From positions 177,415 through 241,414 of IMG/VR virus record IMGVR_UViG_3300009034_000001: a stretch of DNA of 64,000 nt. The stretch is one strand, 5' to 3'. This document shows, in pieces, positions 22,434 to 45,586 of the stretch (its first letter is position 1; each line of letters starts with the position of its first letter). Both the position numbers and the translations under genes were made by a program. The notes below the pieces were generated by a model that saw nothing but the letters and a program-made list of their open reading frames with translations, was not told the origin of the DNA and ran no database searches.

Positions 22434-22487
22434 AATATACATATGTACCTTAACGAACTTCAAGGGGGTCCTTAAAATTTTTTTGTG
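22434..22487 (-). promoter_or_regulatory. Repeated early promoter, copy 3
   Basis: AT-rich UP element, GGACC-N3-TTGAAG-N18-TATATT. Confidence 0.8.
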
Positions 22488-22497
22488 CCTGTTCCTT

Positions 22498-22863
22498 CTA
22501 TTTACCTAAACAGACTTTTCTAGCTAATGCCTTTAAAGCACCCTTATTCTTATATAACTTCTTTTCCCAATCGGCCAACGTCACACCTTTATAAACAGCG
22601 GAAGTACATAAGCTACCAGTAAGCGATTTAAACCGAGACTCTGGATAAATATTCCAAAGAGGGCACCAAAAACACTTACTAGGCTTCCATTCGACCATGC
22701 AAGTGAATAACGTATTTGAGTCCTTACAGAGTTTACAAGCCTCTCCAAAGGGATGGCTAAAAAACATTCCATTGTATGTAATATTTTTCAGTACAAGCTC
22801 GTAAACACGTTGCTTTGTCCATCTTTTTGACTTTTTGATATCCAAATTTACCACCCCCTCCAA
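22498..22863 (-). CDS. Family A paralog 2
   Basis: CKLC...CFWCPLW...C..AVYKG...NKGALKALARKVCLG. Confidence 0.85.
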   Translation of the reverse strand: MEGVVNLDIKKSKRWTKQRVYELVLKNITYNGMFFSHPFGEACKLCKDSNTLFTCMVEWKPSKCFWCPLWNIYPESRFKSLTGSLCTSAVYKGVTLADWEKKLYKNKGALKALARKVCLGK

Positions 22864-23067
22864 GGAGACTTCCGTTCAAAATAAGCTATTTCAGCCTCCG
22901 TTGCTATAAGATGCCAAGTATATGGCATCAATCTTTCTATTTCACCCCAAGGGGAATCAATTTCATAAGCCTTATCTTCTGGCATACCGCATTTTTGAAT
23001 TAGCCAGTTGGTAGCCCATTCACCAAACCACTCCGGACTGTCACTCCAAACGCTCATAATACACCTC

Positions 23068-23385
23068 CTATCCTAGACAAACCTTTCTTGCTAACGCCCT
23101 TAATGCTCCACGATTTCCTTTAAGTCGATTCGTTATTTCACCTAGCCGTCTACCTTTATGTACATACAAACAACAAGCACTTTCAGAATCAGTATGAGGC
23201 AAATCAACAATATCCCTAAGTCGACAGTAGCCACAAAACTTCATAAACCTAAACGATTGAAAATCAGCTCGTTGTTTCGCGTCTATACAGAGCGGGCAGT
23301 CATTGGGAGCACTAAAGAATATACCGTACTTTTCAATATTGTTCAAAACAATCTTTAAGATATCCTCACGCGTATAACTACTCAT
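23068..23385 (-). CDS. Family A paralog 3
   Basis: NIEKYG...CPLC...CGYC...C..VHKG...GNRGALRALARKVCLG. Confidence 0.85.
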   Translation of the reverse strand: MSSYTREDILKIVLNNIEKYGIFFSAPNDCPLCIDAKQRADFQSFRFMKFCGYCRLRDIVDLPHTDSESACCLYVHKGRRLGEITNRLKGNRGALRALARKVCLG

Positions 23386-23640
23386 AATAAGCCCCCATTT
23401 TTAAGATTGTCGTAATACTCTTTCATACAACCCTTGTCACTTGGACACAACCCCCAAGTATCAGCCCATTTTCCATACGACTCATAAGCAGGCAGTGTAA
23501 ATGACTCTTTCCAGAATCTTCCACATAGACCACACCAATAGTGGTCGTACTTAACAGAAGGACAACCTGTAAGGAGCCAAGATAACCTATCAAATATCCT
23601 CCTTAACATCTGACACCTCCATTTCACAATAATTTTCTAA

Positions 23641-24011
23641 CTATCTTGGAATAAAGATTTCATTACATACAAATACACGCAATTTTCGTTGCCAGCCCTT
23701 TGCAATCACCTTTCGTATCTTTACTTTCTTTATTACGGGACTTCGCGGATACGGGAAATGGGAGTAGCCCAACTACGTGCGTCGCGTAAAGTATAAAAAC
23801 AATGCCAGCCATTTTTATACTCCTTTCCGAGCCAATCATGTAAAAATTGTTTGGGTTGTCCCACTGAAAAATCCTTAGCACGCAACCACTTACCTAAAGG
23901 TCGTGTCTTGCAACCGTAGAATTCGCCATACAAGCCATTAGCCGAGTCCACAAAGACTTTATAACCATACTTTGGTCGATACAAAGACGTGTCAAGTTGT
24001 CGAAGACACAT
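23641..24011 (-). pseudogene. Family B paralog 4, frameshifted near 23765
   Basis: Frame 1 ends at IREVP*; the family C-terminus (KKVKIRKVIAKGWQ...VFVCNEIFIPR*) continues in the -1 frame. Confidence 0.75.
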
Positions 24012-24022
24012 TTAACCACCCC

Positions 24023-24331
24023 CTAACCTAAAAAGACCTTCCTTGCTAATGCTCTAAGTGCTCCCTTTTTTCCTCTTAATTGTGAAGAGATATTGCGTAA
24101 TGACTTGTTTTTATGTTGTATCAAACAACAATCGGCATTCTCCGGCATTGGATACAGATCCCACAGCGGACAATAGTAACAGGCCCCCGACGGATAATTT
24201 AAAACTTCACCTCGACGTGAGTCTGCTTCATGACAAGCTTCGCATGTAGAAGAATCACCATATATGTCTCCAAAATTCTCGATGTTCTTTAAAGCAAGTT
24301 GAAAAACTCTTTTCTTTGTCCACTTTTTCAC
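24023..24331 (-). CDS. Family A paralog 4
   Basis: WTKKRV...CEAC...CYYCPLW...GALRALARKVFLG. Confidence 0.85.
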   Translation of the reverse strand: MKKWTKKRVFQLALKNIENFGDIYGDSSTCEACHEADSRRGEVLNYPSGACYYCPLWDLYPMPENADCCLIQHKNKSLRNISSQLRGKKGALRALARKVFLG

Positions 24332-25011
24332 TTCCTTTCACCTCCTTCTAGAATTTTTTCTTGCACAAAACAATCATATTCAATTGTACTGCCAAATCCC
24401 TTGTCGTTTACCCAAAATATGAACATATAATCATTTTCCATGTACAATTCCCGAAACGATTTATAGTGTAACAACCTATGCTCAAGTGGTAGTGTAAGGT
24501 CAATAACTATCTCACTGCCAACACTAGTTACCATAACAGCCACCAGGTGACCCTCACCCGTACTTTCGGGATCGCCGCGTAAGATAGCTTTTAGTAGCGG
24601 TCTTTCCAATAGTAACAATATTCCTACTTGATGTTCCGGGAAAATATATTTTAATGAAGCACCTACGAACATAGCTGCATCTTCACAATCACCAACTAGT
24701 CCATCTTTAACCGTTTGACTAGGTGACTTCCACCCATCGTTTTTGGCCAACGCTAGGTCAGTGTCAACAACGTAAGTAAAAGCCTTCAACATTTCAGTAA
24801 GTTCTTGCCCTGTTTGTGGCCTCACTTTCTCAAATGTCACACGGTCATCTTCAATGATACTATGAACAAATACTTCAAAATCCGTTTGTAGTTTATCTAT
24901 TGGACTACGCACTGTTTCGGGTTCATAGCAGGATGCACCGGCGTCTAACATTATCCAACAAAGTGTAAATAAAATGAGGCATCTAATGGCTTTCATGTTC
25001 CTATTCTTCAA
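24328..25011 (-). CDS. Transglutaminase-like cysteine proteinase (BTLCP-like) with signal peptide
   Basis: Hydrophobic N-terminus; W.SP.QT...GDCED; GHLVAV; downstream D completing a Cys-His-Asp triad. Confidence 0.75.
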   Translation of the reverse strand: MKNRNMKAIRCLILFTLCWIMLDAGASCYEPETVRSPIDKLQTDFEVFVHSIIEDDRVTFEKVRPQTGQELTEMLKAFTYVVDTDLALAKNDGWKSPSQTVKDGLVGDCEDAAMFVGASLKYIFPEHQVGILLLLERPLLKAILRGDPESTGEGHLVAVMVTSVGSEIVIDLTLPLEHRLLHYKSFRELYMENDYMFIFWVNDKGFGSTIEYDCFVQEKILEGGERK

Positions 25012-25061
25012 TTTAATTTTGTTACAGTTACATTGTTATGTTTCCAAACACGTTTCCATAA

Positions 25062-25412
25062 CTAACCTAGACAGACTTTCCTTGCTAAAGCTCTAAGCGC
25101 CCCCTTGTTTTTGTTAAGGAACATTGACCACATTCCAAGACTTTTACCCTTGTACTTATAATTAGCACAGTAAAACTTACCACGTTGACTAACACTGGGA
25201 GGTCTAACAAGTTGCCAAATTGGACAATGGTCACATAGTGTAGTGCTTCCATACGTTCCGCTATTGTACCACAGATCTCTTGCATCATGACACAACTGAC
25301 AAGTGCGAACTAATCCAAAGAGTCCGCCTGTATCTTCAATATTTTGTAAAACTTGTTTATAAACTGCTTCACGCGGCCATTTCTCCATTATTAGCACCTC
25401 CTTTTCAATCAA
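25062..25412 (-). CDS. Family A paralog 5
   Basis: CQLC...CDHCPIW...C..YKYKG...NKGALRALARKVCLG. Confidence 0.85.
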   Translation of the reverse strand: MIEKEVLIMEKWPREAVYKQVLQNIEDTGGLFGLVRTCQLCHDARDLWYNSGTYGSTTLCDHCPIWQLVRPPSVSQRGKFYCANYKYKGKSLGMWSMFLNKNKGALRALARKVCLG

Positions 25413-25950
25413 TTAATGTTGCCCACGTCATACAATTTATTTTCATTGCCTTGCGCTTGCTTGAAACACAAATATCAATACGTTCCGTAAATCTCCTATT
25501 CATCAAATCAGCGATCCAAAACTTTCCAAAACCCTCAATGTAAACACATTTTGGCGGTTGCCACCCTTTTCTAAATAAATCCCAAGATACAGCCACAGTT
25601 CCACCAGGTCGAGGTTTTAACATAAAAGCCGTATGAAATGGGTCACTGTCTGTTTCAGCTTTATCAAGAGTATAAGCAGTAATAGTTACATACTTAACTT
25701 TGTACGTTTCCAACTCGGAAATTCGAGCTTCATGGTCAGCTAAACGTATTCCCATTGCGGCCAATTTCGACTCCATATTACTTAATCGTTCTTGAGGACT
25801 TACAAACCCACGTTGGCTTTCAAGTTTACCTTTAAGTTTATATGTGTTATCAACTGCAAGAGCAAAAAAGACGAATAAGCCAACCATAAAGGCGAGTCCG
25901 CCAACAGCACATACAATGAAAACAACAAATCTTCCAATATGCTTACACAT
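25405..25950 (-). CDS. Membrane-anchored 3D-domain protein (lytic-transglycosylase-like)
   Basis: N-terminal TM helix and coiled coil, then VTITAY...TDSDPF.TA...VAVS.D...YIEGFG...D.M...RIDI. Confidence 0.8.
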   Translation of the reverse strand: MCKHIGRFVVFIVCAVGGLAFMVGLFVFFALAVDNTYKLKGKLESQRGFVSPQERLSNMESKLAAMGIRLADHEARISELETYKVKYVTITAYTLDKAETDSDPFHTAFMLKPRPGGTVAVSWDLFRKGWQPPKCVYIEGFGKFWIADLMNRRFTERIDICVSSKRKAMKINCMTWATLID

Positions 25951-26350
25951 TTTTTTTACCTCCCAACTCTCTTCTTATTTACTTGGTTTTTTCTTACGTA
26001 AGCGCCTTATCAGTTCCCACGCAACTTCACATTCAATTGTACGACCGCCTCTAATTTCTTCGCACCGCTTTAAACTATCTTCTAATCCCTTGATCGACTT
26101 TTTTTCAAATTTCCGTAAATCACTTCCCATTCTTCACCCTCCAATCTTGAATTACTTCTTATCTAAGCCCGTAAACATCTTCCACAGTTTGGGCTTCTTC
26201 AATCCTTTCAGTGCTTCCGGAGAGTAGCCTTCAACTATGAGAGCTTCACGTAACTGCTTAGACTTAAGCAAAAAATATAGTTCAGGTTTTGAACGTAAAA
26301 CGTTTTTAACCAATACAAACATCATCTCCTCCGTACATTGATATATCTAC

Positions 26351-26545
26351 TCAACCAACGTCTACATATTCCGTACAAAGTTGCAAAACTTCATCATAAG
26401 AGTGAGCTCCCAAAGCTTTCTTTGAAAATTCATCCGCCCGCTGTTTCAACCCGGCCCTTTTCAAAGTTTTAGCAACTATTCCAATTATGTTAAAAACGTT
26501 TCCGTCCTGACCAATCAGTTTACATTTAGGTTTATTACTCATCAC
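26351..26545 (-). CDS. Conserved phage hypothetical protein (L.GQDGNVF.IIG...SYDEVL)
   Basis: Motif recalled from widespread phage small proteins. Confidence 0.6.
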   Translation of the reverse strand: MMSNKPKCKLIGQDGNVFNIIGIVAKTLKRAGLKQRADEFSKKALGAHSYDEVLQLCTEYVDVG

Positions 26546-27912
26546 AAAGAAACCTCCTTTATAGTTATTTCATCCTCTCACGCTTTTTGAATGTTATCAT
26601 CTTCGTCCACGAAGATTATTTCATCACATTCATCACCCAGATAGTGCATTCCACATTCTTCGTCATCACAAAGATGTATTCCGCTTGTTGGCGTGCTTCT
26701 CGTTGCAGGTTCCTCACAATAGGAGCACTTCGGAATTTCGCCTACTTCCCAGAGATACCCAGAACTTTCATAATGTCCAGCCATTTGACACCTCCTTCTT
26801 TCTACAGATGTTTTGCGAGTTCGTTATAAAACGTCACACTCGCTACTCCCCGACTGTCACCTATATAACGTTGACTGTAAGGTCTCATTGACTCGCCAAC
26901 GCCAACTTCAAACGTGCCGTCAGTAAACTCAATCAAACAAATAACCTCCTCCGCAAAGCCAAACTCGACCGTTAGTATATTTTCAACTTTTCGGTCTTCA
27001 ATAATACCTTTCCAACCATCGCCAATATTTTCCAATTCTTTGCCATATATCAGATATATTTCAAACTCCCTCATCTCACATCTCCTTATATGTTGCATTT
27101 AAACGTTAAAATTATTAGAAGATCCACCAAACAAATTTGACGCCTAATGCAACACATGCCCCCTTATAAGCCCACGCAAATGAATCTATCAAAAATCCTA
27201 ACACGTCACCTATTACTTCGCCAACATCAATGTTGTTGTTCATAATGTCATCCTCCCTTTAAGAATTCAATTGCCAAAATTGTTACTATTAACGCCCACA
27301 TGAGCCATGTCCATCTAATTCCAAATATCATAGATGCCTCCTCCACAAGTTATTTATTTCCCGTTTTTACCTGAACAGAAGTCATCTGCAAGCGTTGCAG
27401 CAATTTCAAACGAATAACCACTAATCTCTTCTACTTCATACTCTCCACGAACCTCCACTTGGTCCCCAGGTTCGGGTTTGTCGGATGAAAAGAAGAAGTA
27501 AGTTCTATCCTCGCAGACGTTTCCATTACTTTCTAACAAAGCGCATAAGTATATACGCATTGTGCTAATCCTCCTTCTATTTATTTCCTTTTTATAGCCA
27601 CGCCCATAGCCTTTGCTTCTCTTTCAAGAACCTCCGGATGAAACTGTGAAAAGTGTTCAATTACGGCACACCTTTCGCGTCTCTTAAGCGTTTTTCCGTT
27701 GGGACTTTTCATATCAAGTCGAATTCGGTAAGAAACATCTATCTTGACACCACATAAATTACAAGTGCCTTCCTTCCTGATAATCTCCGACCACTTGCTA
27801 TTAAGAGATCCACACCTCGGACATGCTGGTTCAGTTGAATCCTGCTCAAAATGTTGCTCCACACTTATGACAATACCATCTGGTCATTTCTCCTCCCTAG
27901 ATAGTTCAAAAA

Positions 27913-28158
27913 TTACCTAATTCGGCCTTTTTCAACAGCTGACTTAATTCTGGCCTTCTCGTAAAGTGTTCTCACTGCAGCTTCCAATCTAGTCATCGCA
28001 ATATGGTCAAAGAAACGCTCGTCGCATTTTGTGCACTCAATCCATTCAAGTCCACATATTCTTTCATTAACTTCAGGTAGTCTAAGTGGATAATTGCCCT
28101 CGCGGGCTACCATTTCCCCACCACAAAGCGGACAGACGGTGTTGACCAGTTTCTTCAC
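27913..28158 (-). CDS. YgiT-type zinc finger (MqsA antitoxin N-terminal-like), no HTH
   Basis: CPLCGGEM...I.GL....CTKCDERFFD.....RLE. Confidence 0.75.
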   Translation of the reverse strand: MKKLVNTVCPLCGGEMVAREGNYPLRLPEVNERICGLEWIECTKCDERFFDHIAMTRLEAAVRTLYEKARIKSAVEKGRIR

Positions 28159-28174
28159 TAATTAGTCACCTCCT

Positions 28175-28393
28175 TTATTTTCCACGATGACTGCGTTTAC
28201 TTGCCTTCAGAGGATTTATCATCTTACCAGTCTTTTTATCTTTAATAAGTGTCGGAGCCATTGGGCACCGTTCGCCTAAAGGATGTCCAGGCTCACGCCA
28301 TTTTCTCTCAGGATATAAATACACCTTACACTTCCCACCCTCAATATGAAGACAATCGTCATCAATACACCTCTGGATTATCTCACCGCCCAT
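28175..28393 (-). CDS. PxxKW-family cysteine-rich protein
   Basis: C..Y..PERKW....CPMA...K.INPLKASKR matches the PxxKW family pattern known from Desulfobacterota. Confidence 0.75.
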   Translation of the reverse strand: MGGEIIQRCIDDDCLHIEGGKCKVYLYPERKWREPGHPLGERCPMAPTLIKDKKTGKMINPLKASKRSHRGK

Positions 28394-28655
28394 AAGCTTC
28401 CCTCCTCACACAATGACTTTTTTAGAAATTATCTATAAGTTTTCTGATTGATGGATTCCGAATTTCAACCTCGTCAAGATTTTGGGGAAACAACAACACA
28501 GCAAATTGGTCTTCAAGGCTCATACCATCATAGCACACACGAATAAAACGTGCTCTCTCGTCACGACTTAATTTTCCAAACCAAGTAAAGAAACCCATGT
28601 TTTGTAGTTCACGTTCCATACTACCACCCTCCTATGACAGTTAAATAAGGAAAAA

Positions 28656-29006
28656 CTATTTCAATATTTTGACAGCTAACGCTCTAAGTGCGCCTTTATT
28701 GCCGTGTAACTTACTATCCAATTCAGTCAGACGTTTACCTTTATGTAAATAATTGACACATTGGTTAGAACTACCCTTCAACTCCAAAGGTTGTTTGAAA
28801 ATATTCCACAGAGGACACAAATCACAAACATCCTCGTCAATATCCAAGGTTAAATAACGTGTCCACCTTTCATCCTCCGCCTCGTGGCACATTTTACACG
28901 GAACACTATACATAGAGCCATAACTCTCGATGTTGCCAAATACCAATCTTAATACTCTACTTTTTGTAAACTTCGGCCTTCTCCTTCTGGGAAACATAAA
29001 CATCAC
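28656..29006 (-). CDS. Family A paralog 6
   Basis: NIESYGS...CKMC...CDLCPLW...C.NYLHKG...GNKGALRAL. Confidence 0.85.
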   Translation of the reverse strand: MMFMFPRRRRPKFTKSRVLRLVFGNIESYGSMYSVPCKMCHEAEDERWTRYLTLDIDEDVCDLCPLWNIFKQPLELKGSSNQCVNYLHKGKRLTELDSKLHGNKGALRALAVKILK

Positions 29007-29150
29007 CTCCTAAGTACTAATCATCAGGCGTAAAACCTTTACAGCCTTTACAGCCTTTACTGCTTGTACTGCTATCGCAAATCAAAAATGCTATAAACAT
29101 CACCAAACCAAAGAAAATTGAGAGTACAATTTCCATAACGTCGCCCCCAC

Positions 29151-29498
29151 TTAGCCCGACAATATTTTAGTAGCAACCGCTTTTAGTGCCCCTTTGTTAG
29201 GAAACAAAAGCTCATCCCAGGTGGATAACGATCTGCCTTTATATCGATATTCATAACATTGACCCTCAGTGCCTTTCAAATCCCTAGGTTGTGATAGTAC
29301 ATCCCATAACGGACAGTAATCACAATGACAAGAGTCTATTCCAAGAAGAGAGCCGGGTGGGTTATATATGTCGATATTGGGATAGCGCTTCGTTGATGCA
29401 CGGCACAATGCACAACCGCAGCCAAAAAAGGATTTATGTTGATCGATATTACGATACACTAACTGAAGTATTTTGTCCTTAGTCCACTTCCTTGGCAT
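29151..29498 (-). CDS. Family A paralog 7
   Basis: CALC...CDYCPLW...C..YRYKG...NKGALKAV. Confidence 0.85.
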   Translation of the reverse strand: MPRKWTKDKILQLVYRNIDQHKSFFGCGCALCRASTKRYPNIDIYNPPGSLLGIDSCHCDYCPLWDVLSQPRDLKGTEGQCYEYRYKGRSLSTWDELLFPNKGALKAVATKILSG

Positions 29499-29514: not shown

Positions 29515-29832
29515 TTAACTATCCTTCTTTGTTAAGTTGTTAACTAACGCAAGCAATAATGCTCGTAGTGCAGGTTTATTGTTACGTAATTTAGAATCCA
29601 AACTATGCAAGATTTTGCCTTTATATTTAATATTTGCGCAATCCGACATATATGGAATCGACTGTTTTAAATACCTCCAAAGTGGACAGACGTCACACTG
29701 GGAGTGGTCAAAACCAGCATGTTCCTCGGCTTCAACACAAAGTAGGCAAGTAAACGGATCTCCATATAAAGAGCCATCGCGTTCAATGTTACGCTCGACG
29801 CACCTTATAATAGATTTCTTCGATAGCTTCAT
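29515..29832 (-). CDS. Family A paralog 8
   Basis: KKSIIRCVERNIE...CLLC...CDVCPLW...C.NIKYKG...NKPALRALL. Confidence 0.85.
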   Translation of the reverse strand: MKLSKKSIIRCVERNIERDGSLYGDPFTCLLCVEAEEHAGFDHSQCDVCPLWRYLKQSIPYMSDCANIKYKGKILHSLDSKLRNNKPALRALLLALVNNLTKKDS

Positions 29833-29847
29833 TTTTTTTAGCCTCCT

Positions 29848-30171
29848 TTAGCTAAAGTGATTAATAAGTCCCCTTAACAACGCCAGTAACGCCGGCTTAT
29901 TTCCCCTTAGCTTTTTATTATGAACCCAAAGCGGGTTACCTTTATATCGTATAATAGAACAGCCGCTTTCAGCATCCGTACGACAGCCCAATTCCGGCAT
30001 TGTCACATAATCCCACAACGGACAGAAATTACACTTATAAGCAGAAAGATGTCCACGCCTGTTAAAAGCAATACTACAAAGTAAACAGTTAAAACGACTA
30101 AACAAAGAACCATGCATTTTAATGTTTCGCTCGACGAAATTTATAAGGTTTTCCTTTGAAATCTTATGCAT
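29848..30171 (-). CDS. Family A paralog 9
   Basis: CLLC...CNFCPLW...C..IRYKG...GNKPALLALL. Confidence 0.85.
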   Translation of the reverse strand: MHKISKENLINFVERNIKMHGSLFSRFNCLLCSIAFNRRGHLSAYKCNFCPLWDYVTMPELGCRTDAESGCSIIRYKGNPLWVHNKKLRGNKPALLALLRGLINHFS

Positions 30172-34410: not shown

Positions 34411-34734
34411 TTATTTCTTGGCCCCCTTCGAATAGAAATTTATTAAACCTCTTAAAAACGCTCGTAGCGCAGGTTTATTTCCTTCCAACCTACTTTCAAT
34501 AGTAAACACAGCTTCTCCCTTGTATTTCAGGTGGCTACAAGCGGCTTCCAAACCGCAAAACTTTGGTTTTGGTAAATAATCCCATAATGGACAGTACTTA
34601 CATGTAAAATATTCCGTGGGAGACGTTCTCTTGTCAGCCTCAATACAAAGTTTACAGCTATGTAAACCTCCACTGAATGAGCCATATTTCTCGATGTTAT
34701 TTTTTATAAACTGAATAATTGTTGACTTCTTCAT
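34411..34734 (-). CDS. Family A paralog 10
   Basis: Family motifs; first of a 7-gene tandem array. Confidence 0.9.
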   Translation of the reverse strand: MKKSTIIQFIKNNIEKYGSFSGGLHSCKLCIEADKRTSPTEYFTCKYCPLWDYLPKPKFCGLEAACSHLKYKGEAVFTIESRLEGNKPALRAFLRGLINFYSKGAKK

Positions 34735-35063
34735 TTATGTCTTCCTCCTTTATTTTTATACTCGTTGATGAGTCCATTTAACATTGCACGTAGTGCAGGT
34801 TTATTTCCTGTCAACCTGGAATCCAACACAACCAACTTTTCTCCTTTATATTTAAGATTAAAACATTCGGCCCCATAATGTTCAAACTCTGGTTTTGGCG
34901 CGTAATCCCATAGTGGACAAACTTGACATACATCACGGACATCACGAAACAGCAACTTCGCTTCAGCTTCTCTACAAAATATGCAACCACGACGACCGCC
35001 CCAAAGGGAACCACTTTTCTCTATATTACCTCTTAAAAACCGAATAATGGTTGACTTCCTCAT
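34731..35063 (-). CDS. Family A paralog 11
   Basis: Family motifs. Confidence 0.9.
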   Translation of the reverse strand: MRKSTIIRFLRGNIEKSGSLWGGRRGCIFCREAEAKLLFRDVRDVCQVCPLWDYAPKPEFEHYGAECFNLKYKGEKLVVLDSRLTGNKPALRAMLNGLINEYKNKGGRHK

Positions 35064-35067
35064 TTAT

Positions 35068-35382
35068 TTAATCCTCCTTGTCAAAATGTTTAATTAGTCC
35101 ATTTAATAAAGCTCGAAGTGCCGGTTTGTTTCCTTCCAACCTCATTTCAATCTCAAACAACGCTTTTCCATTATACTTAAGATTTGCACAGCTAGCTTGA
35201 TAACTACGACACTTTGGTTTTGGTATATAATCCCATAGTGGACAGACCTTGCATGCAAGCCAATCCGGTGGGGACATCCTCTTTTGAGCCTCGGCACAAA
35301 GTTTACAGTTAGATAAATTACAAAATGAGCCATATTTCTCAATATTATTTTTTACAAACCGAATAATGGTTGACTTTCTCAT
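35068..35382 (-). CDS. Family A paralog 12
   Basis: Family motifs. Confidence 0.9.
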   Translation of the reverse strand: MRKSTIIRFVKNNIEKYGSFCNLSNCKLCAEAQKRMSPPDWLACKVCPLWDYIPKPKCRSYQASCANLKYNGKALFEIEMRLEGNKPALRALLNGLIKHFDKED

Positions 35383-35386
35383 TTAT

Positions 35387-35719
35387 TTAATCCTCCTTGT
35401 CAAAATGCTTAATTAGTCCATTTAATAAAGCTCGAAGTGCCGGTTTGTTTCCACGCAACTTGAAATCAATCGTATTCAATGTTTCCCCTTTATAACTAAT
35501 CCACCCACAGCTATATTCATTAGTTGGTATGTAATCCCACAGAGGACAAGCAACACACCTACACCTGCCATAATGGTAGGTATTATTAGGATCAAACCTT
35601 TTATCAGCCTCCCAACAAAGCATGCATCCACAGCTCAATTCAAATGCTTTCCTGCAGAATAACGAGCCATACCTCTCAATATTATTCTTAACAAATCGAA
35701 TAATGGTTGACTTCCTCAT
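35387..35719 (-). CDS. Family A paralog 13
   Basis: Family motifs. Confidence 0.9.
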   Translation of the reverse strand: MRKSTIIRFVKNNIERYGSLFCRKAFELSCGCMLCWEADKRFDPNNTYHYGRCRCVACPLWDYIPTNEYSCGWISYKGETLNTIDFKLRGNKPALRALLNGLIKHFDKED

Positions 35720-35723
35720 TTAT

Positions 35724-36035
35724 TTAATCCTCCTTGCCAAAGTGATTAACTAACCCATTTAACAATGCTCGAAGTGCTGGTTTGTTTCCAGCCAACTTGT
35801 TTTCCCAAACTAGTAACGGTTCTCCTTTATAACTAATCCACCCGCAGGCAGGCGTAATATCACACTTTGGTTTTGATATGAAATCCCATAGTGAACAAAC
35901 TTCACAGATATTACAAAACGCGGGCTTCCTCAATTTAGCTTCTGCGCAAAGTATACAATCACTCAATCCACCAAAGAGGGAACCACGACTTTCGATGTTT
36001 CCTTTTACATACCGAATAATTGTTGCCTCCTTCAT
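35724..36035 (-). CDS. Family A paralog 14
   Basis: Family motifs. Confidence 0.9.
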   Translation of the reverse strand: MKEATIIRYVKGNIESRGSLFGGLSDCILCAEAKLRKPAFCNICEVCSLWDFISKPKCDITPACGWISYKGEPLLVWENKLAGNKPALRALLNGLVNHFGKED

Positions 36036-36352
36036 TATTTTCTCCCTTTACTAGCCAAATTGACCAATCCATTCAACACCGCGCGTAATGCTGGTTTGTT
36101 TCCTTCCAATCTCATATCCAACACGCACAATCTTTCGCCTTTGTATTTAATCTTGCCACATGGGGATTCAAAACCTTCATACTTTGGTTTTGGAAAATAA
36201 TCCCATAATGAACATGCATCACAGGAATTCCAAAATAAAGCTTTCCGCTTTTTTGCTTCGTTACAAAGTACGCAACCAACTGTGCCACCGAAGAGAGAGC
36301 CATAACTCTCGATGTTTTCTTTCACACATAGAATAATTGTTGATTTTTTCAT
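36035..36352 (-). CDS. Family A paralog 15
   Basis: Family motifs. Confidence 0.9.
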   Translation of the reverse strand: MKKSTIILCVKENIESYGSLFGGTVGCVLCNEAKKRKALFWNSCDACSLWDYFPKPKYEGFESPCGKIKYKGERLCVLDMRLEGNKPALRAVLNGLVNLASKGRK

Positions 36353-36684
36353 CTACTAAGTCCTCCTTTATTAAACGAGTTGACAACCCCATTTAACAAC
36401 GCACGCAGTGCGGGTTTGTTTCCTTTGAGAGTGTCACTCCAATAAGCTAGCCTCATCCCTTTATACAATATATCCTCGCAGTAAGGACTTATATTACCTA
36501 TCAAAACAGGGTCACTTATATAATCCCACAGGGGACAGAAACTGCACTTTGGTGTCAGTCCCGAGGTTTTTGCACGGCGCGCTGAAGCTACCAAACAAAT
36601 TTTACAAATAGACGCGAGCCCGTATAAAGAGCCATGTGTATTGATGTTTTTCTCAACACACCTTATAATTGATTTCAGGTTCAT
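36349..36684 (-). CDS. Family A paralog 16
   Basis: Family motifs. Confidence 0.9.
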   Translation of the reverse strand: MNLKSIIRCVEKNINTHGSLYGLASICKICLVASARRAKTSGLTPKCSFCPLWDYISDPVLIGNISPYCEDILYKGMRLAYWSDTLKGNKPALRALLNGVVNSFNKGGLSR

Positions 36685-36898
36685 TTACTTCCACCTCCTC
36701 TTTAAATACTACATGTGTTTCCACAGCTCCACAGCATCCTTCATAATTGTAGGTTTCCTCGAAAGAAGCATCAGTGGAATATTTATTATAGCTGCAATCA
36801 CAACAAGTATCGGGAAGAAGATAGGAGTGATTGTCCACTTAATACTCTGTTTCACAATTATTTCGCCCCCTTCTTAATTTACCATCTTTTTAAACACA

Positions 36899-37129
36899 TC
36901 AATGCCCTATACGAAAAGTCTTTCTTAAAATAATTGAGACTCTCACCAATAAACTTAGATGTCTAGCCTTCCATTCAGCACTTAGTTTCCTCCAACTACA
37001 ATGGAGACAAAAGTCTTCTGGATAACCTACCCGAATAGTGCCAGAACAGACTGGACAAGCTCTAAATAACTTATATATCTCGACCTTGCCTTCTTTAGCT
37101 ACCAACGTGGACCCTCTACGTTTGGCCAA
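36899..37129 (-). CDS. Zn-ribbon protein (paralog of 48601-48807)
   Basis: CPVCSG....GYPEDFCLHCSW. Confidence 0.65.
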   Translation of the reverse strand: MAKRRGSTLVAKEGKVEIYKLFRACPVCSGTIRVGYPEDFCLHCSWRKLSAEWKARHLSLLVRVSIILRKTFRIGH

Positions 37130-38071
37130 AGTAATGCCACACCTGAGCAGTTAGTTCATCAATTGCACGCTGCCGTTCTTCAGCTCTCCGTTTCCAGAAA
37201 GATACCTGCTTTTCATGGTGGCAATTCAACCATTCCAAATCCTGTTCTAAATCAATAACCTCATCGATCCACTTATCTATTACTTTCTTGACTGACATTA
37301 ATCCTCCTCCTTAAGCTCCAGGCACCCCTAGTAGTTTACAAAGAAAGACAACTACAAGAATACCTGCAGACAGACCTACCCAAAAGCTAAATGGATCCAC
37401 TTTATGGCTTAACGGCTTCTCACAATGCTCACAAAATCTCATCTCAAACCTCCTAAAGATCCGGCGTCCAATCTTCAACCGTTGTTTTAAGTTTCCAACA
37501 CAGTTTAAAAACTATCAACCGGCATTTTGGCAAACTTAACTTTGGATAACGCTCATGAATCCTCTTCGATAGCTCTTCTACAATTTGCTCATCTGAATAA
37601 CCAGCTTCTTTCAAGCTATCAATATCACGTTCAATATACACATTTCCATAGCTCATCTCAAACCTCCCGTTTTTTAGCCTTTAGAACCATCATGGGCGGC
37701 CCTAAAGGAAACATATACATCTGTTTGAACTTTTCAAGTTCGCAATTTAACCAGTCGATTTCCCTCCAAAGTTTCTCAACTTCCAGCCGCTTCTCATTCT
37801 CTATTCTCAAATTGCTAGGCGGACAAAAGATACACGCCATAAGATACCTCCTTTATTTCTTCCCATCGCCCCAACGTATTCCATTCTTGCATCTTTCTAG
37901 TAAATCATTAATACTCTGTAGCTCAGAATCAATTTCTTGAATCTGACTAATAATTGCCTTAGCAACAACTATATCGAATTGTAACACAATGGTAGCTAGG
38001 TGTTTCTCTTTTAGTTCTTTAGCACTTAATATTATACCATCTATCAATTCAGCTAGCGCTTTTTCTTTCAT

Positions 38072-38275
38072 TTAATAGCCTCCACGCTCTAAAGCATCAG
38101 CACATTCATTGCACTGATAACCTTTGGCTACATCCAATGGAGTAAGTCGATTTGGTTTTCCACAATTAGGACACGGATGTTTCCTTGGATTCTTCTTTGT
38201 AGCTGCACGAAGAGCACTTCCTCCGCCCGGATCCGCAAAGCCAACCCCGTCAATGAGCATCTCTTCATCATGCAT
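38072..38275 (-). CDS. Conserved phage Zn-ribbon protein
   Basis: FADPGG.SALRAA...PCPNCG..NRLT..D...GYQC..CAD. Confidence 0.6.
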   Translation of the reverse strand: MHDEEMLIDGVGFADPGGGSALRAATKKNPRKHPCPNCGKPNRLTPLDVAKGYQCNECADALERGGY

Positions 38276-40146
38276 CTCTTTGATACCTCCTTAAAAGAAT
38301 TTAATTAAGAACCAATAAGTGCCCATCCCAGAACCAAGAAAAATGTTGCCACCAATACACAAATAATACATATACATATTTTCTCACGTCTATTGTATAG
38401 AGGCTCCCTACTAACTCCCGGGAACCTTACATCACCAGCCTCTTCATGCTTCCTTAACTTATGTAGAACGACATTTATCTTTTCAGTAGCTTCCTCATCT
38501 ATTTGCATAAATCTACAATACGCAGACTCAATCCGCTTTGCACCTTGTACCACACGGTTAATAAGTTCAATCTGTTCACAATTAAGTTCTCCCTTCTTAG
38601 CTAACCTGGCGACTGTAACTGCGGCAAACTTATTAGCTAACTTAGTTAATCTCGGATTATGCATATCTTATCACTCTCCTCGAATTGCGTTTCGGATTTT
38701 TCTGATATACAATTGTTTAAGGTCTTTGTAAAGCTGCCTTTTATTTTTTCCGGAAAGCAAGACCTTCCCGCTTCCAACTCCAAAACACTCCATCCGTGCT
38801 TCTCGCTCAGAGTTGACTTTCGAACTTACTCTGATAAGTGAACCATATTCAACAACATAGTACTTCTTTGCCATCTTAAATCACCTCCCAAACTAAATAT
38901 CTTTAATAGTATGTACCTTTTTCGGAAAGATTCTTCCCAGTCCACTATCGTACGTTTTGTATAAAGCGTATCCAAAAATGCCTCCAATGATTATGCACAC
39001 CACGCTATACAGTATGGCCGCCAAGAAAGCAATCCACTGAACCAACAGCTGGTCAGGGTATTTCAACAACAAATTTTTATACACCTGGGAAACAACCCAA
39101 ATGCCATATAAAGAGCCTGTCCAACAAAGTATGCAAGTTATCAAACCTAGCACCTTACAAGATACTTTTTGGAGTAAATTCATCCTTTTATCCCTCCTTT
39201 ATCTTTAGCAATTACTCATTAAACTTATTAAGCTGACGCGCAATATTCTCAAGTTGAGTAGCAATAGCAGCTAATCCAGTTAGAAGCGCTCGCGCAGTTG
39301 TTAGCAGAACCAACTTGTCATTGGTCGGCCCTGTTAGCTTTAGTTTCGACATATCTTCAAAAGACAAAGATTTTTCGATAATATCGTCGAGAGTCTTAAT
39401 CTGTGTTTCAACCTTCTTGTCCATTGGTTTCTCCTTGTTACAAAAAATTAGGTACAGTATAAACACACCATATAAACATTCCTACTAACTACTTGTGCTT
39501 CCGTCTGCGAAAAAACTTTCTGCGCTTGCCTTTTGTTTTCCAAACAGGCATTACATATTCCTCCACCAACCAATTTCTTCAGAGCATTTCTTTAGTCCAA
39601 TGTACATCCAGAAATGTGATACGAGCAACTTAAAAATAATGAAAAGTATTAGAAATAGTTCAATCATATCAATTCCTCCTTATCGTTTCTTTGGAAATCT
39701 CATACCGACGTCATCAAGCCTACAAGCACATACATCACCAGACAATCCTAACTCACACATAGCACCGTCAACAGCATTATAAAATGGCACGCCTCTAATG
39801 TCTGTAACCTCATAAATGCCAATTACTTCAAAAGGGTCATCCGCTGTCGGATACCTATTAGTAAACCAACAGCACTTATTAACTTTAATCGAGTCAGGGT
39901 TAGGATCAGCTTCCCTATCTTCTACTAAAAATATTCTCATAACTTTCTACCTCCTTCATGTTGAATTAAACATAATCTTTCGGCCCGTAAATAATCGAGT
40001 AATCACTAAAGCTGTGTACGAATTGTGAAACCATGTAACCCAATAATGCACAAATGGCTACCACCAAAATAAGTCTAAATACTAACCCGGATTTCCCTTT
40101 TAGTTTAAGCCAAAATAAACGCATCATTTCACACCTCACACTCTTT

Positions 40147-40455
40147 CTAACCAAAGTAATTATCTAATCCCTTTAGTAGTGCTCGTAGTGCTGGTCTATT
40201 TCCAGCTAGCCTAGAGTTCAAGACATGAAGATTCTTACCTTTGTATTTAATCTGATCACATCCACAAATATACGTTGGCCACTCTGGTCGAGGCATGTGG
40301 TCCCACAGGGGACACCACGCACAACTTGAGCCACAACTTGTGCCTTTCCTAGCCATGGCAACATCACACAATGCACAATCGAGCGGATGCCCATACAAAG
40401 AGCCATGGTTCGAGATGTTATTCCTTAAAAAACGAATAATCGCTGTCTTATTCAT
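40147..40455 (-). CDS. Family A paralog 17
   Basis: Family motifs; first of a 5-gene tandem array. Confidence 0.9.
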   Translation of the reverse strand: MNKTAIIRFLRNNISNHGSLYGHPLDCALCDVAMARKGTSCGSSCAWCPLWDHMPRPEWPTYICGCDQIKYKGKNLHVLNSRLAGNRPALRALLKGLDNYFG

Positions 40456-40781
40456 TTCTTTATTTCCTCCTTACCAAAACGCGTAATTAATCCATTCAAG
40501 AGTGCACGTAGTGCTGGTCTATTTCCAACTAGAATACAATCAATCGCCAACAAAGACCTTCCCTTATATACAATCCCAGAGCAGCTATAATTACTAGTAG
40601 GTATGTAATCCCACAACGGACAATCCATACAAGTTCCCTCATAGACATCAGGGTCAAAGTCGGGGTTAAACCGCTTATCGGCCTCTTTACAAATCACACA
40701 ACCCGCCATTTCCTTACTGAACAACGAGCCATACTCTTCAATATTCCTCTTGACACATCTTATAATGGTTGTCTTCTTCAT
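40452..40781 (-). CDS. Family A paralog 18
   Basis: Family motifs. Confidence 0.9.
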   Translation of the reverse strand: MKKTTIIRCVKRNIEEYGSLFSKEMAGCVICKEADKRFNPDFDPDVYEGTCMDCPLWDYIPTSNYSCSGIVYKGRSLLAIDCILVGNRPALRALLNGLITRFGKEEIKK

Positions 40782-41098
40782 CTTTTTATTTCCTCCTTGC
40801 CAAAGTAATTAACTAATCCATTTAGCAGCGCTCGTAGTGCTGGTTTGTTTCCACGCAATCTATGCTCAAATTTGTACAGAGTTGTTCCTTTATGCCAAAT
40901 ATCTGCACAATCGGCTCTGTGACCCGGTGGTTTTGGCATGATATCCCATAATTGACAGTTATTACATTCAGATGTACCCAGTGAAGTTTTCCGCTTTTCT
41001 GCTTCCTTACACAAAACACAATTAAACGGGTCGCCATATAAAGAGCCATACGTCTCAATATTACGTTTTACAAGGCTAATAATAACTGACTTCTTCAT
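40778..41098 (-). CDS. Family A paralog 19
   Basis: Family motifs. Confidence 0.9.
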   Translation of the reverse strand: MKKSVIISLVKRNIETYGSLYGDPFNCVLCKEAEKRKTSLGTSECNNCQLWDIMPKPPGHRADCADIWHKGTTLYKFEHRLRGNKPALRALLNGLVNYFGKEEIKR

Positions 41099-41424
41099 TT
41101 ATTAAGTCCTCCTTTTTCAAACAAGTTGATAACCCCATTTAACAATGCTCGTAGTGCTGGTTTGTTTCCTTCCAGCTCGGAATCAATCGAAATCAACGGT
41201 TTCCCTTTATACCTAATCCACCCACAGCTATTATCACTAGTAGATATGTAATCCCACAGAGGACAAGCAACACACCTACACCTGCCATAATGGTGGGAAT
41301 TATTAGGGTTAAATCTTTTACCTGCCACATCACAAAGTGCACAGGTTGTAAGTTTATCACTAAATAACGAGCCATACTTCTCGATATTCCTCTTGACACA
41401 TCTTATAATGACTGACTTCTTCAT
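41095..41424 (-). CDS. Family A paralog 20
   Basis: Family motifs. Confidence 0.9.
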   Translation of the reverse strand: MKKSVIIRCVKRNIEKYGSLFSDKLTTCALCDVAGKRFNPNNSHHYGRCRCVACPLWDYISTSDNSCGWIRYKGKPLISIDSELEGNKPALRALLNGVINLFEKGGLNK

Positions 41425-41759
41425 TTGTTTAATTCTCCTTTATTAAAAGCGTTGATAAGTCCATTTAATAACGCTCGAAGAGCTGGTTTATTGCCATTCA
41501 AGAAGTAATCAGAAGCAAAAAGTTTTGCTCCTTTGTAGAGAATGTCAGAACATTCTGAATACCTACCAGATGGTCTTGTTATGTGATTCCACAATGGACA
41601 GAGGTCACATTCAAGTACCATTTCGAAAACCTTCCAATCCGTTTGAGAAGCACGCTTTTGTGCTCCCTTACAAAGAATGCAATCATCTGGAATTCCGTAT
41701 AACGACCCATACTTCTCAATATTCCTTTTGATGCATCTTATAATAGCTGAAACCTTCAT
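41421..41759 (-). CDS. Family A paralog 21
   Basis: Family motifs. Confidence 0.9.
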   Translation of the reverse strand: MKVSAIIRCIKRNIEKYGSLYGIPDDCILCKGAQKRASQTDWKVFEMVLECDLCPLWNHITRPSGRYSECSDILYKGAKLFASDYFLNGNKPALRALLNGLINAFNKGELNK

Positions 41760-42805: not shown

Positions 42806-42849
42806 CTTTTGTGTCCTCCTTCTAAATAAGTTTAATCAAACCAAATTAT

Positions 42850-43176: not shown

Positions 43177-43206
43177 CTTTTGTATCCTCCCTCTAAATAA
43201 GTTTAA

Positions 43207-43548: not shown

Positions 43549-43592
43549 CGTTTATACCTCCTTTCGGTGGTTAATAAAACCAAGTTATTTAT

Positions 43593-45562: not shown

Positions 45563-45586
45563 CTCTTTTAAATATACTCCGTACTG

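What the first reader, a model, noticed from the sequence alone, without database searches (positions are those of the whole stretch)
35498..41294. Mosaic cores: a 50-nt identical tract shared by family A copies 5.7 kb apart
Seen: 35528-35577 is identical to 41245-41294 (HYGRCRCVACPLWDYI), although flanking segments of these two genes resemble other paralogs. The CGWI.YKG segment is shared by paralogs 13, 14 and 20. Inference: gene conversion or segment shuffling generates new loop combinations, as in antigenic-variation cassettes.
Basis: partly seen in the sequence, partly recalled or inferred. Interest (0 to 1): 0.6.

Follow-up and report, generated by a model that had tools for sequence, protein, structure and literature searches.

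The report
Mosaic zinc-protein gene array in phage
A 241-kb phage from sediment carries 21 tandem copies of a small cysteine-rich gene found nowhere else, and the copies have swapped pieces by ordinary recombination between paralogs, not by a programmed cassette-switching system.

Summary
Window 35528-35577 and 41245-41294 are identical over exactly 50 nt, and both encode HYGRCRCVACPLWDYI on the minus strand. The tract is the peak of a 186-nt core (86% identical) shared by paralogs p13 (35387-35719) and p20 (41095-41424).

Outside that core each gene resembles other copies. The 3' end of p13 matches its neighbour p12 (94% over a 118-nt block that runs across the gene boundary). The 3' end of p20 matches p16, and its 5' end matches p18.

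Several tests support recombination:
- An exact 3SEQ-type test gives p = 1.2e-10.
- A PHI test gives z of about -5.
- Segment trees reject one another.
- Synonymous divergence varies 8- to 17-fold along the same gene pair.

Together these reject simple duplication and protein-level convergence.

The genes belong to a family of 21 paralogs of about 105 aa. They are basic, have five invariant Cys (two CxxC pairs plus one), and have no relative among about 15 billion proteins and no recognisable fold.

All copies are intact, each with its own ribosome-binding site. The genome has no reverse transcriptase. No population variants were seen, at low coverage.

The best reading is evolutionary gene conversion or non-allelic recombination among tandem paralogs, seeded by conserved sequence islands. 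It is not antigenic-variation-style switching. The proteins' function is unknown.

The parts
35387..35719 (-). Paralog p13 (110 aa). Mosaic: conserved N-helix, a unique loop 1, a core shared with p20 and a 3' end shared with p12.
41095..41424 (-). Paralog p20 (109 aa). Mosaic: 5' end like p18 and p21, core shared with p13, 3' end like p16.
35528..35577 (-). The 50-nt perfectly identical tract, copy in p13 (CDS nt 143-192). It encodes HYGRCRCVACPLWDYI.
41245..41294 (-). The 50-nt perfectly identical tract, copy in p20 (CDS nt 131-180).
35418..35603 (-). Shared core block in p13 (CDS nt 117-302). It is 86% identical without gaps to 41135-41320. Synonymous divergence (dS) is 0.21 here against 0.79 and 1.69 in the flanks.
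41135..41320 (-). Shared core block in p20 (CDS nt 105-290), the partner of 35418-35603.
35335..35452 (-). Junction module: the last 66 nt of p13, a 4-nt spacer and the first 48 nt of p12. It is 94.1% identical to 35016-35133 and contains the AAGGAGGA ribosome-binding site inside the C-terminal codons of p13.
35016..35133 (-). Junction module: the last 66 nt of p12, a spacer and the first 48 nt of p11. Partner of 35335-35452.
35664..35799 (-). Junction module between p14 and p13. It is 87.5% identical to the p13/p12 junction and 84% identical to the p19/p18 junction in the other cluster.
36348..36425 (-). 3' end of p16, 87.2% identical to the 3' end of p20 (41094-41171). dS is 0.33 for the 3' segment of p20 versus p16, against saturation elsewhere in that pair.
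41094..41171 (-). 3' end of p20, partner of the p16 3' block.
40723..40781 (-). 5' end of p18 (and the last bases of p19), 89.8% identical to the 5' end of p20 (41366-41424).
35823..35846 (-). CGWISYKG segment of p14. A slightly shifted 24-nt window (35820-35843) is 95.8% identical to p13 (35483-35506). This may be a short conversion patch, but it is not significant after correction.
34411..36684 (-). Array 1: seven head-to-tail paralogs p10-p16. Their stop and start codons overlap by 1-4 nt or are 4 nt apart.
40147..41759 (-). Array 2: five head-to-tail paralogs p17-p21 with 4-nt ATGA overlaps.
29515..30171 (-). Paralogs p08 and p09, of intermediate divergence (51-58% nt identity to arrays 1 and 2).
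19250..29498 (-). Span holding seven divergent, scattered paralogs p01-p07: 19250-19582, 22498-22854, 23068-23385, 24023-24331, 25062-25388, 28656-28997 and 29151-29498. Most end in ...KGALRALARKVCLG.

Best explanation
The window is the accessory arm of a 241-kb, circularly assembled jumbo phage. It holds a lineage-specific family of 21 small proteins (102-118 aa). They are basic and probably bind zinc.

Within the two tight arrays the genes alternate between two kinds of sequence:
- conserved islands: the N-helix codons, the CxxCPLWDY codons, the GNKPALRALL codons, and a junction in which the C-terminal codons double as the Shine-Dalgarno site of the next gene;
- divergent loop-coding cores.

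Homologous recombination between misaligned copies starts in the conserved islands. It may be gene conversion or non-allelic crossover, and may use the phage's own RecA/UvsX-like recombinase or the host's. It has moved patches of about 60-190 nt between copies.

One event placed the same loop 2 / loop 3 core in p13 (array 1) and p20 (array 2), 5.7 kb apart. Later or separate events homogenised the p13/p12 and p12/p11 junctions and gave p20 a p16-like 3' end and a p18-like 5' end. The 50-nt identical run is the best-preserved part of the shared core. It is either a younger nested patch or the most constrained stretch.

Shown: the mosaic structure, its statistical support, the block boundaries, the intactness of all copies, and the absence of a reverse transcriptase. 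Inferred: the enzymology, the direction and order of events, and any adaptive value.

What the proteins do is a guess: either sequence-specific nucleic-acid binding or regulation, or binding of host proteins.
For: - Exact identity and coordinates.
- Family membership and anatomy. Invariant residues are C32, C35, C55, C58 and C71.
- Sliding-window nearest neighbours switch from p12 to p20 and back to p12 along p13.
- Exact hypergeometric-walk triplet test: p13 = p12/p20, p = 1.2e-10, Bonferroni 1.6e-7 over 1320 triplets. p20, p21 and p12 are also significant.
- PHI permutation test: z = -4.8 to -5.5, with 0 of 2000 permutations as low.
- Segment ML trees are mutually rejected (AU p <= 0.003). 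The core clade p13+(p18,p20) has UFboot 94.
- Segment dS (N-terminal / core / C-terminal): p13-p20 0.79 / 0.21 / 1.69; p13-p12 1.17 / 1.33 / 0.10. The p20-p16 C-terminal segment is 0.33.
- Block map, including blocks that cross gene boundaries and are flanked on both sides by divergent cores.
- A Shine-Dalgarno site precedes every copy, and in the arrays it lies inside the upstream gene's tail.
- The phage encodes a RecA-family protein (E = 2e-35).
- The sequence is reproduced in a second contig (99.985% identical) and in independent runs (0 differences), so it is not an assembly chimera.
Against: - Only one genome carries the family. Direction, timing, and whether the exchange was within one genome or between co-infecting relatives cannot be resolved.
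- The segments are short (75-198 nt). Bootstrap support outside the core is weak, and AU tests against trees estimated from the same data are liberal.
- The dS values rest on 13-31 synonymous sites per segment.
- Loop alignments are uncertain.
- The triplet and PHI tests are my own implementations, not the published programs.
- The 5' similarity of p13 to p12 is mostly at the amino-acid level (dS 1.17), so not every block of resemblance is a recent exchange.
Confidence: 0.8

Rival explanations
1. Simple recent duplication. p13 and p20 are just the youngest duplicate pair and have diverged evenly. The 50-nt run is a chance stretch without substitutions.
For: p13 and p20 are each other's closest relatives over the whole gene (76% nt identity).
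Against: - P(run >= 50) is 2e-5 at 76% identity.
- dS differs 4- to 8-fold between the core and the flanks of the same pair.
- The flanks have closer relatives elsewhere, at 94%, 87% and 90% identity.
- The triplet test gives p = 1.2e-10.
- The segment trees are incongruent.
Confidence: 0.03
2. Protein-level constraint or convergence. The shared core reflects selection for the same loops, not shared DNA ancestry.
For: The tract includes the family-wide invariant CxxCPLW motif.
Against: - Identity extends to synonymous positions. Core dS is 0.21, against values above 1 for other pairs in the same columns.
- Other copies encode the same CPLWDY motif with different codons.
Confidence: 0.02
3. A programmed diversification system: antigenic-variation-like cassette conversion into an expressed copy, or a diversity-generating retroelement.
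For: Variable segments are flanked by conserved sequence. There are many copies in one orientation.
Against: - All 21 copies are intact and each has its own Shine-Dalgarno site and start codon. There is no asymmetry between silent and expressed copies.
- Exchanged tracts are 84-94% identical, so the events are old.
- The genome has no reverse transcriptase, and the mismatch spectrum shows no adenine bias.
- No variant forms or joints appear in a second contig or in other runs, although depth there is low.
Confidence: 0.05
4. Exchange between different phage genomes. The mosaic arose when co-infecting relatives with diverged arrays recombined out of register, or by unequal crossover that changed copy number, rather than by within-genome gene conversion.
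For: Mosaicism by recombination between co-infecting phages is general phage biology (established knowledge). The data show only the products.
Against: - The short internal patches (118 nt and 186 nt), bounded on both sides by divergent sequence, look like conversion patches. A single crossover would not leave that pattern.
- No relative carrying the family exists in any collection searched.
Confidence: 0.1
5. Assembly artefact. The metagenome assembler created chimeric copies at the repeats.
For: The sequence comes from a short-read metagenome contig, and repeats of 50 nt can confuse assemblers.
Against: - The shared blocks are 84-94% identical rather than 100%, which a path switch cannot create.
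- A second contig spans p10-p15 identically.
- A contig from another run spans the p20 tract with both flanks and no differences (record 8).
Confidence: 0.02

Closest known systems
Tandem paralog clusters diversified by recombination at conserved intragenic sequence (Staphylococcus aureus lpl cluster; Tsuru and Kobayashi 2008, PMC2568036)
   Same: - Co-oriented tandem paralogs.
- A conserved nucleotide stretch inside every ORF that can serve as a recombination site.
- Incongruent phylogenies for different parts of one ORF.
- A conserved unit that spans the 3' end of one ORF, the spacer and the 5' end of the next.
   Different: - In lpl the conserved part is central and the ends vary. Here the ends and junctions are conserved and the centre varies.
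- lpl lies on a bacterial genomic island and could be compared across many genomes. Here there is one phage genome and an unrelated protein family.
Lineage-specific expansion of a zinc ribbon in Bacillus phage G (about 35 copies; Iyer et al. 2021, PMC7824862)
   Same: A jumbo phage with tens of copies of a small zinc-binding protein. Those authors suggest specific transcription factors or structural DNA-binding proteins. The family here is likewise small and basic (pI 8.5-9.8), and a phage sigma factor lies among its members.
   Different: A six-frame profile search of the phage G genome found no sequence relationship at E <= 1. The fold predicted here is mostly helical with two CxxC knuckles and matched no ribbon structure. 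Mosaicism was not reported in the passage of that paper that I read.
Antigenic-variation cassette systems (Borrelia vlsE/vls, Neisseria pilE/pilS, Anaplasma msp2; from general knowledge, not tested against sequences here)
   Same: Variable segments bounded by conserved sequence are exchanged by segmental gene conversion among many copies.
   Different: - No single expression locus and no truncated or promoterless donors.
- Every copy can be translated.
- The tracts are old (84-94% identical).
- No within-population variants were seen.
- This is a phage cytoplasmic protein family, not a surface antigen.
Diversity-generating retroelements of phages
   Same: A phage-encoded way to vary a short protein segment on a constant scaffold.
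   Different: No reverse transcriptase, no template/variable repeat pair with adenine-specific changes, and many full-length genes rather than one target gene.
Multigene families and gene accordions of large eukaryotic DNA viruses (for example poxvirus K3L amplification and the ASFV MGF families; from general knowledge)
   Same: Tandem arrays of small paralogs in a variable genome arm of a large DNA virus, thought to reflect host-virus conflict.
   Different: No homology, and a bacterial virus. Copy-number dynamics have not been observed here, because only one genome is known.

Membership tests
Interlocus gene conversion / non-allelic homologous recombination among tandem paralogs | Different segments of the same genes support different relationships | tested here: met
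   Triplet test p = 1.2e-10, Bonferroni 1.6e-7. PHI z about -5. AU tests reject the other segments' trees, p <= 0.003.
Interlocus gene conversion / non-allelic homologous recombination among tandem paralogs | Synonymous divergence is heterogeneous along a gene pair, so similarity is not due to protein constraint | tested here: met
   dS (N-terminal / core / C-terminal): p13-p20 0.79 / 0.21 / 1.69; p13-p12 1.17 / 1.33 / 0.10.
Interlocus gene conversion / non-allelic homologous recombination among tandem paralogs | Short high-identity patch bounded on both sides by divergent sequence | tested here: met
   A 118-nt block at 94% and a 186-nt block at 86% lie between cores or loops that are 40-67% identical.
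Interlocus gene conversion / non-allelic homologous recombination among tandem paralogs | Non-reciprocal transfer within one genome, as opposed to crossover or inter-genome exchange | not testable with these tools
   Only one genome carries the family, so no donor/recipient polarity can be read.
Antigenic-variation cassette system | One expression site plus silent, truncated or promoterless donor cassettes | tested here: not met
   All 21 copies are full-length ORFs with a Shine-Dalgarno site and a start codon.
Antigenic-variation cassette system | Ongoing switching that produces variant forms within a population | tested here: inconclusive
   The second contig is identical across p10-p15. Contigs from two other runs show 0 differences and no joints, but their depth is only 2-5 and coverage is partial.
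Antigenic-variation cassette system | Variable segments flanked by conserved recombination substrates | tested here: met
   Conserved islands occur at the junctions and at the CPLWDY and GNKPALRALL codons.
Diversity-generating retroelement | Reverse transcriptase gene in the element | tested here: not met
   PF00078 has no match in the 241-kb genome, while the control genomes matched.
Diversity-generating retroelement | Template and variable repeats differ at adenines of the template | tested here: not met
   The 26 mismatches are spread over all base classes. At mismatched sites p13 has A10 T9 G5 C2 and p20 has A9 T6 G6 C5.
Known zinc-finger or zinc-ribbon families (Pfam) | Match to a curated family model above its threshold | tested here: not met
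   No family matches more than one member. The best match is DUF6600 at 22.8 bits, below its cut-off of 27. PHROGs gave only two chance-level matches for one member (E 0.1 and 0.18). The best PDB sequence match is E = 0.15.
Known zinc-finger or zinc-ribbon families (Pfam) | Four metal ligands in two knuckles | tested here: met
   Two invariant CxxC pairs plus a fifth invariant Cys in all 21 copies. Metal binding itself was not tested.
Phage G zinc-ribbon expansion | Detectable sequence homology to the phage G copies | tested here: not met
   Profile A1 against the six frames of JN638751 gave no match at E <= 1.

The most novel reading that the evidence does not exclude
The arrays may be a recombination-based diversification device. 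In this reading, conserved junction and motif islands are maintained because they let the phage reshuffle hypervariable loops around a zinc-knuckle scaffold among about 20 expressed copies. That would keep a repertoire of binders tracking variable host targets or DNA sites. It would be a route to protein diversity in phages distinct from retroelement-based systems, and it would sit in a protein fold and family with no known relatives.
Probability: 0.12. Interest if true: 0.75.

Novelty: new member of a known kind. Interest (0 to 1): 0.42.

Why it matters
The case shows how a large phage builds and remodels a private gene family. Twenty-one copies make up about 4-5% of its genes, and they have no relative in about 15 billion proteins and no recognisable fold.

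The mosaic pattern gives a clean, statistically solid example of gene conversion among tandem paralogs in a phage. The unit of exchange ignores gene boundaries.

If the variable loops are binding surfaces, the family would be a natural library on a small zinc scaffold. Its targets, whether host proteins or nucleic acids, would reveal an unknown layer of phage-host interaction in sediments.

There is also a practical point. A public virus catalogue record trims away exactly this arm of the genome, so such families are easy to miss.

Tried and rejected
Searches for relatives, all without an outside hit:
- megablast of 34000-42000 and tblastn of p13 against 50,697 phage records;
- a profile-derived pattern scan of IMG/VR;
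- the word-indexed search of 5.8 billion protein clusters;
- the exhaustive HMMER search of 1.84 billion representatives. Every hit was one of this genome's own paralogs.

Family and fold searches:
- Pfam, PHROGs and PDB sequence searches gave only sub-threshold zinc-finger-like noise.
- The AlphaFold model (pLDDT 85.6) matched nothing. Foldseek against PDB found no hit with E <= 0.001, VIA-align wide gave a best Z of 3.7, and the Atlas shape search gave TM < 0.5.
- The Atlas language-model search gave unnamed viral clusters at 0.91. They could not be followed up and lie within the tool's stated chance range.

Other checks:
- The phage G zinc-ribbon expansion is not detectably homologous.
- DGR was rejected. 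RecT and ERF are absent.
- A search for relatives of the phage through its DNA polymerase returned only a trimmed record of the same contig.
- Laying contigs of three sediment runs on 35430-41420 showed identical short pieces and no joints. That is no support for ongoing switching, but the power is low.
- The first triplet script timed out, and the first tree run failed on the thread count. Both were rerun.

Full report
OBSERVATION. Window 35528-35577 and 41245-41294 are identical base for base, and the identity stops at both ends, so the run is exactly 50 nt. All genes in this window are on the minus strand, and GC skew is about -0.25 throughout. On that strand the tract reads HYGRCRCVACPLWDYI in two intact CDSs, 35387-35719 and 41095-41424.

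WHAT THE GENES ARE. An HMM built from the obvious copies finds 21 members in the window and none elsewhere in the genome.
- Twelve members form two tight head-to-tail arrays: p10-p16 at 34411-36684 and p17-p21 at 40147-41759. Their stops and starts overlap by 1-4 nt or are 4 nt apart.
- p08 and p09 lie at 29515-30171.
- Seven more divergent copies are scattered over 19250-29498.
- The proteins are 102-118 aa and basic (pI 8.5-9.8). They have no N-terminal hydrophobic stretch.
- All 21 share I14, C32, C35, C55, C58, C71, L88, A94, L95 and A97 in p13 numbering. That is two CxxC knuckles plus a fifth Cys, with near-invariant PLW, YKG and GNKPAL motifs.
- Column entropy is high, and indels occur, in three loops: before the first knuckle, between the knuckles, and after the second knuckle.
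- Every copy is preceded by a Shine-Dalgarno site close to AAGGAGG. In the arrays this site lies inside the C-terminal codons (K-E-D, K-E-E, K-G-G) of the upstream gene.
- An AlphaFold model built from the paralog alignment alone is confident (pLDDT 85.6). It is mostly helical, with a long N-helix, a long C-helix and short helices at the knuckles.

NO RELATIVES, NO KNOWN FOLD.
- Pfam, PHROGs and PDB sequence profiles give nothing above threshold.
- The word-indexed search of 5.8 billion clusters and the exhaustive HMMER search of 1.84 billion representatives (drawn from about 15 billion proteins) return only this genome's own copies.
- The phage collection and IMG/VR give nothing.
- Foldseek against PDB, VIA-align against 48,161 chains (best Z 3.7) and the Atlas shape search (TM < 0.5) find no fold match.
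- The language-model search lists unnamed viral clusters at 0.91. That is only a lead and lies within the tool's stated chance range.

GENOME CONTEXT. The window is the last 64 kb of a single 241,415-bp contig from JGI metagenome 3300009034.
- The contig's ends overlap by 43 nt.
- About 450 ORFs are all on one strand, with 89% coding density under code 11.
- It encodes a portal protein, a prohead protease, a family A DNA polymerase with a UDG domain, a Lon-like protease and a RecA-family protein.
- It is therefore a jumbo phage. The runs that hold it are sediment metagenomes.
- The window arm is dense with small ORFs and holds the four largest paralog families of the genome. This family, at about 21 of 452 genes, is the largest.
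- A sigma-70-type factor (20376-21110) sits among the scattered copies.

IS THE MOSAIC REAL?
- Over the whole gene, p13 and p20 are each other's closest relatives (76% nt identity), but the identity is very uneven.
- In 45-nt sliding windows the nearest neighbour of p13 changes along the gene. It is p12 (91%) at the 5' end, p20 (76-96%) at nt 106-255, and p12 (87-98%) at the 3' end. For p20 it runs from p18 and p21, to p13, to p16. A motif-delimited table shows the same pattern.
- I ran an exact hypergeometric random-walk triplet test (the 3SEQ statistic, my own implementation) over all 1320 ordered triplets of the 12 array genes. It gives p13 = p12/p20 at p = 1.2e-10 (Bonferroni 1.6e-7). Further significant signals appear for p20 (p16/p13), p21 (p20/p15) and p12 (p13/p10). 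A permutation version agrees.
- A PHI-type test on 169 informative sites gives z = -4.8 to -5.5, with 0 of 2000 permutations as low.
- ML trees for the 5', core and 3' segments differ. The core groups p13 with (p18,p20) at UFboot 94. The 3' segment groups p12 with p13, and p16 with p20. Each segment's data reject the other segments' trees (AU p <= 0.003).
- Synonymous divergence shows that the pattern is not due to protein constraint:

  | Pair | N-terminal dS | Core dS | C-terminal dS |
  |---|---|---|---|
  | p13-p20 | 0.79 | 0.21 | 1.69 |
  | p13-p12 | 1.17 | 1.33 | 0.10 |
  | p20-p16 | 2.44 | saturated | 0.33 |

ANATOMY OF THE EXCHANGED BLOCKS.
1. Core block: 35418-35603 versus 41135-41320, 186 nt without gaps, 86.0% identical. 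It runs from just after the first knuckle to the GNKPALRA codons and contains the 50-nt perfect run.
2. Junction-spanning blocks:
   - 35335-35452 (p13 3' end, spacer, p12 5' end) versus 35016-35133 (p12 3' end, spacer, p11 5' end): 94.1% over 118 nt.
   - The p14/p13 junction versus the p13/p12 junction: 87.5% over 136 nt.
   - The p14/p13 junction versus the p19/p18 junction in the other array: 84% over 131 nt.
3. p16 3' end versus p20 3' end: 87.2% over 78 nt.
4. p18 5' end versus p20 5' end: 89.8% over 59 nt.

The blocks ignore gene boundaries and are bounded on both sides by sequence that is only 40-67% identical. That is what conversion patches look like.

The p13/p20 core block and the p13/p12 junction block overlap in the GNKPALRALL codons. 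There, unrelated copies share 23-36-nt stretches at 97-100% identity, which makes this the likely crossover zone.

The loop 1 segments of p13 and p20 are unrelated. So p13 and p20 carry the same loops 2 and 3 combined with different loop 1 sequences.

Within the 186-nt block a perfect run of 50 is still unlikely under evenly spread mismatches (P = 0.004). This hints at a younger nested patch or at extra constraint on the knuckle, and I cannot tell which. The 24-nt p13/p14 patch around the CGWISYKG codons is suggestive but not significant after correction.

HOW IT MOST LIKELY WORKS. Conserved islands provide homology between misaligned copies. The islands are the junction with its embedded ribosome-binding site, the N-helix codons, the CPLWDY codons and the GNKPALRALL codons. 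Strand exchange starting there copies a patch from one paralog into another. It could use the phage's RecA/UvsX-like protein or host enzymes. The enzymology, direction and order of events are inferred, not shown.

Identities of 84-94% mean the events are old relative to the mutation rate. This is an evolutionary process, not a rapid switch.

WHAT IT IS NOT.
- It is not a cassette system. All copies are intact and translatable, and none is privileged.
- It is not a DGR. There is no reverse transcriptase and no adenine-specific mismatch pattern.
- It is not an assembly chimera. The shared blocks are not 100% identical. A second 13-kb contig from the same sample is 99.985% identical across p10-p15, and its two SNPs lie outside the family. 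Contigs from two other sediment runs reproduce about half of 35430-41420 with no differences, including the p20 tract with both flanks.
- Those same data show no joints or alternative forms, but depth is only 2-5, so they say little about rare variants.

COMPARISON WITH KNOWN SYSTEMS.
- The closest mechanistic precedent is the S. aureus lpl cluster. There, recombination at a conserved intragenic stretch shuffles variable regions, and the conserved unit spans two adjacent ORFs (PMC2568036). The geometry here is the mirror image: conserved junctions and a variable centre.
- The closest biological precedent is the roughly 35-copy zinc-ribbon expansion in Bacillus phage G. Those copies were proposed to be specific transcription factors or DNA-binding proteins (PMC7824862). 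A profile search of the phage G genome finds no homology, so this is an analogue, not a member.

FUNCTION (inferred, low confidence). Several features fit a family of sequence-specific nucleic-acid binders or regulators:
- small size;
- net positive charge;
- two zinc knuckles on a helical scaffold;
- variable loops;
- translational coupling in operon-like arrays;
- a neighbouring phage sigma factor.

They fit binders of host proteins (takeover or counter-defence) about equally well. Nothing here discriminates between these readings.

CAVEATS.
- There is one genome only.
- The segments are short, with 13-31 synonymous sites each.
- Loop alignments are uncertain. MAFFT placed a gap in loop 3 where the ungapped DNA comparison shows none.
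- AU tests against trees estimated from the same data are liberal.
- The PHI permutation ignores codon structure.
- The 5' resemblance of p13 to p12 is largely at the amino-acid level (dS 1.17) and should not be counted as a recent exchange.

VERDICT. The inference of recombination is supported and the cassette analogy is not. The mechanism is of a known kind, operating on a new, orphan phage protein family.

Noticed in passing
whole contig; window 1-64000 = G000:C1:177415-241414: The IMG/VR record IMGVR_UViG_3300009034_000002 (173,109 bp) is 100% identical to contig positions 1245-174353 in the three 6-kb stretches I compared. It therefore leaves out the whole 67-kb accessory arm that holds this window and the family, although the contig ends overlap and the arm has the same strand bias and composition. 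The arm seems to have been trimmed as non-viral flank.
   Followed up: yes
window 63437-64000 and the contig start (G000:C1:1-1519): The contig ends share a 43-nt overlap, which points to a circular or terminally redundant assembly. The last ORF of the window matches the C-terminal HhH-BRCT part of NAD-dependent DNA ligase. The open frame at the contig start (506 aa) is probably the rest of the same gene, but I did not check that.
   Followed up: partly
window 42485-46240 (starts 42485, 42850, 43207, 43593, 45245, 45587, 45917): A second tandem family of seven paralogs (90-134 aa, starting MCDQSTLKERYERE...) has patchy high-identity blocks of its own. One example is 42762-42842 versus 43133-43213, 94% over 81 nt, covering the gene's 5' end plus upstream spacer. 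Patchwise homogenisation may be general in this arm.
   Followed up: partly
window starts 5064, 7378, 10133, 23733, 30589, 31051; and 12689, 53589, 57678, 58274: There are two further paralog families, of 6 and 5 members. The 5-member family has one more copy just outside the window, at genome position 174966. One copy of the 6-member family lies between family members p03 and p04. Repeats with 477-nt spacing at 30612-31509 belong to the 6-member family.
   Followed up: no
window 20376-21110 (-): A sigma-70-type sigma factor (Sigma70_r2 and r4; phrog_351, E = 2e-42) lies among the scattered divergent family members.
   Followed up: partly
window 36349-36684 (-), L016:9036-9371: Paralog p16 is not called in the public gene calls for this contig. 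A 77-aa ORF on the opposite strand is called there instead. p16 is a full-length family member (HMM E = 4e-43) with a strong AGGAGG site.
   Followed up: partly
window 34387 and 31921: These are the only two differences between the 241-kb contig and a second 13.3-kb contig of the same sample (Ga0115863_1010418). Both lie outside the family genes. Two near-identical strains, or an assembly duplicate, coexist in the sample.
   Followed up: yes
window 12170-12246 (-): A single tRNA-Glu (anticodon TTC) gene.
   Followed up: no
window 61342-61983 (-) and 1700-2287 (-): An isochorismatase-family protein (E = 6e-44), and a weak, sub-threshold match to the Pfam Rit1_C model (PF17184, described there as the Rit1 N-terminal domain; 25.5 bits against a cut-off of 27).
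   Followed up: no
window 38072-38275 (-) and 41756-41998 (-): Two other small ORFs carry CxxC...CxxC zinc-ribbon-like spacing. One lies directly upstream of array 2. I did not test whether they are related to the family.
   Followed up: no
G000:C1:109647-111962, 127914-130364 and 105221-106354 (outside the window): A family A DNA polymerase with an N-terminal uracil-DNA-glycosylase-superfamily domain, a LonB/LonC-like AAA protease, and a RecA-family recombinase.
   Followed up: partly
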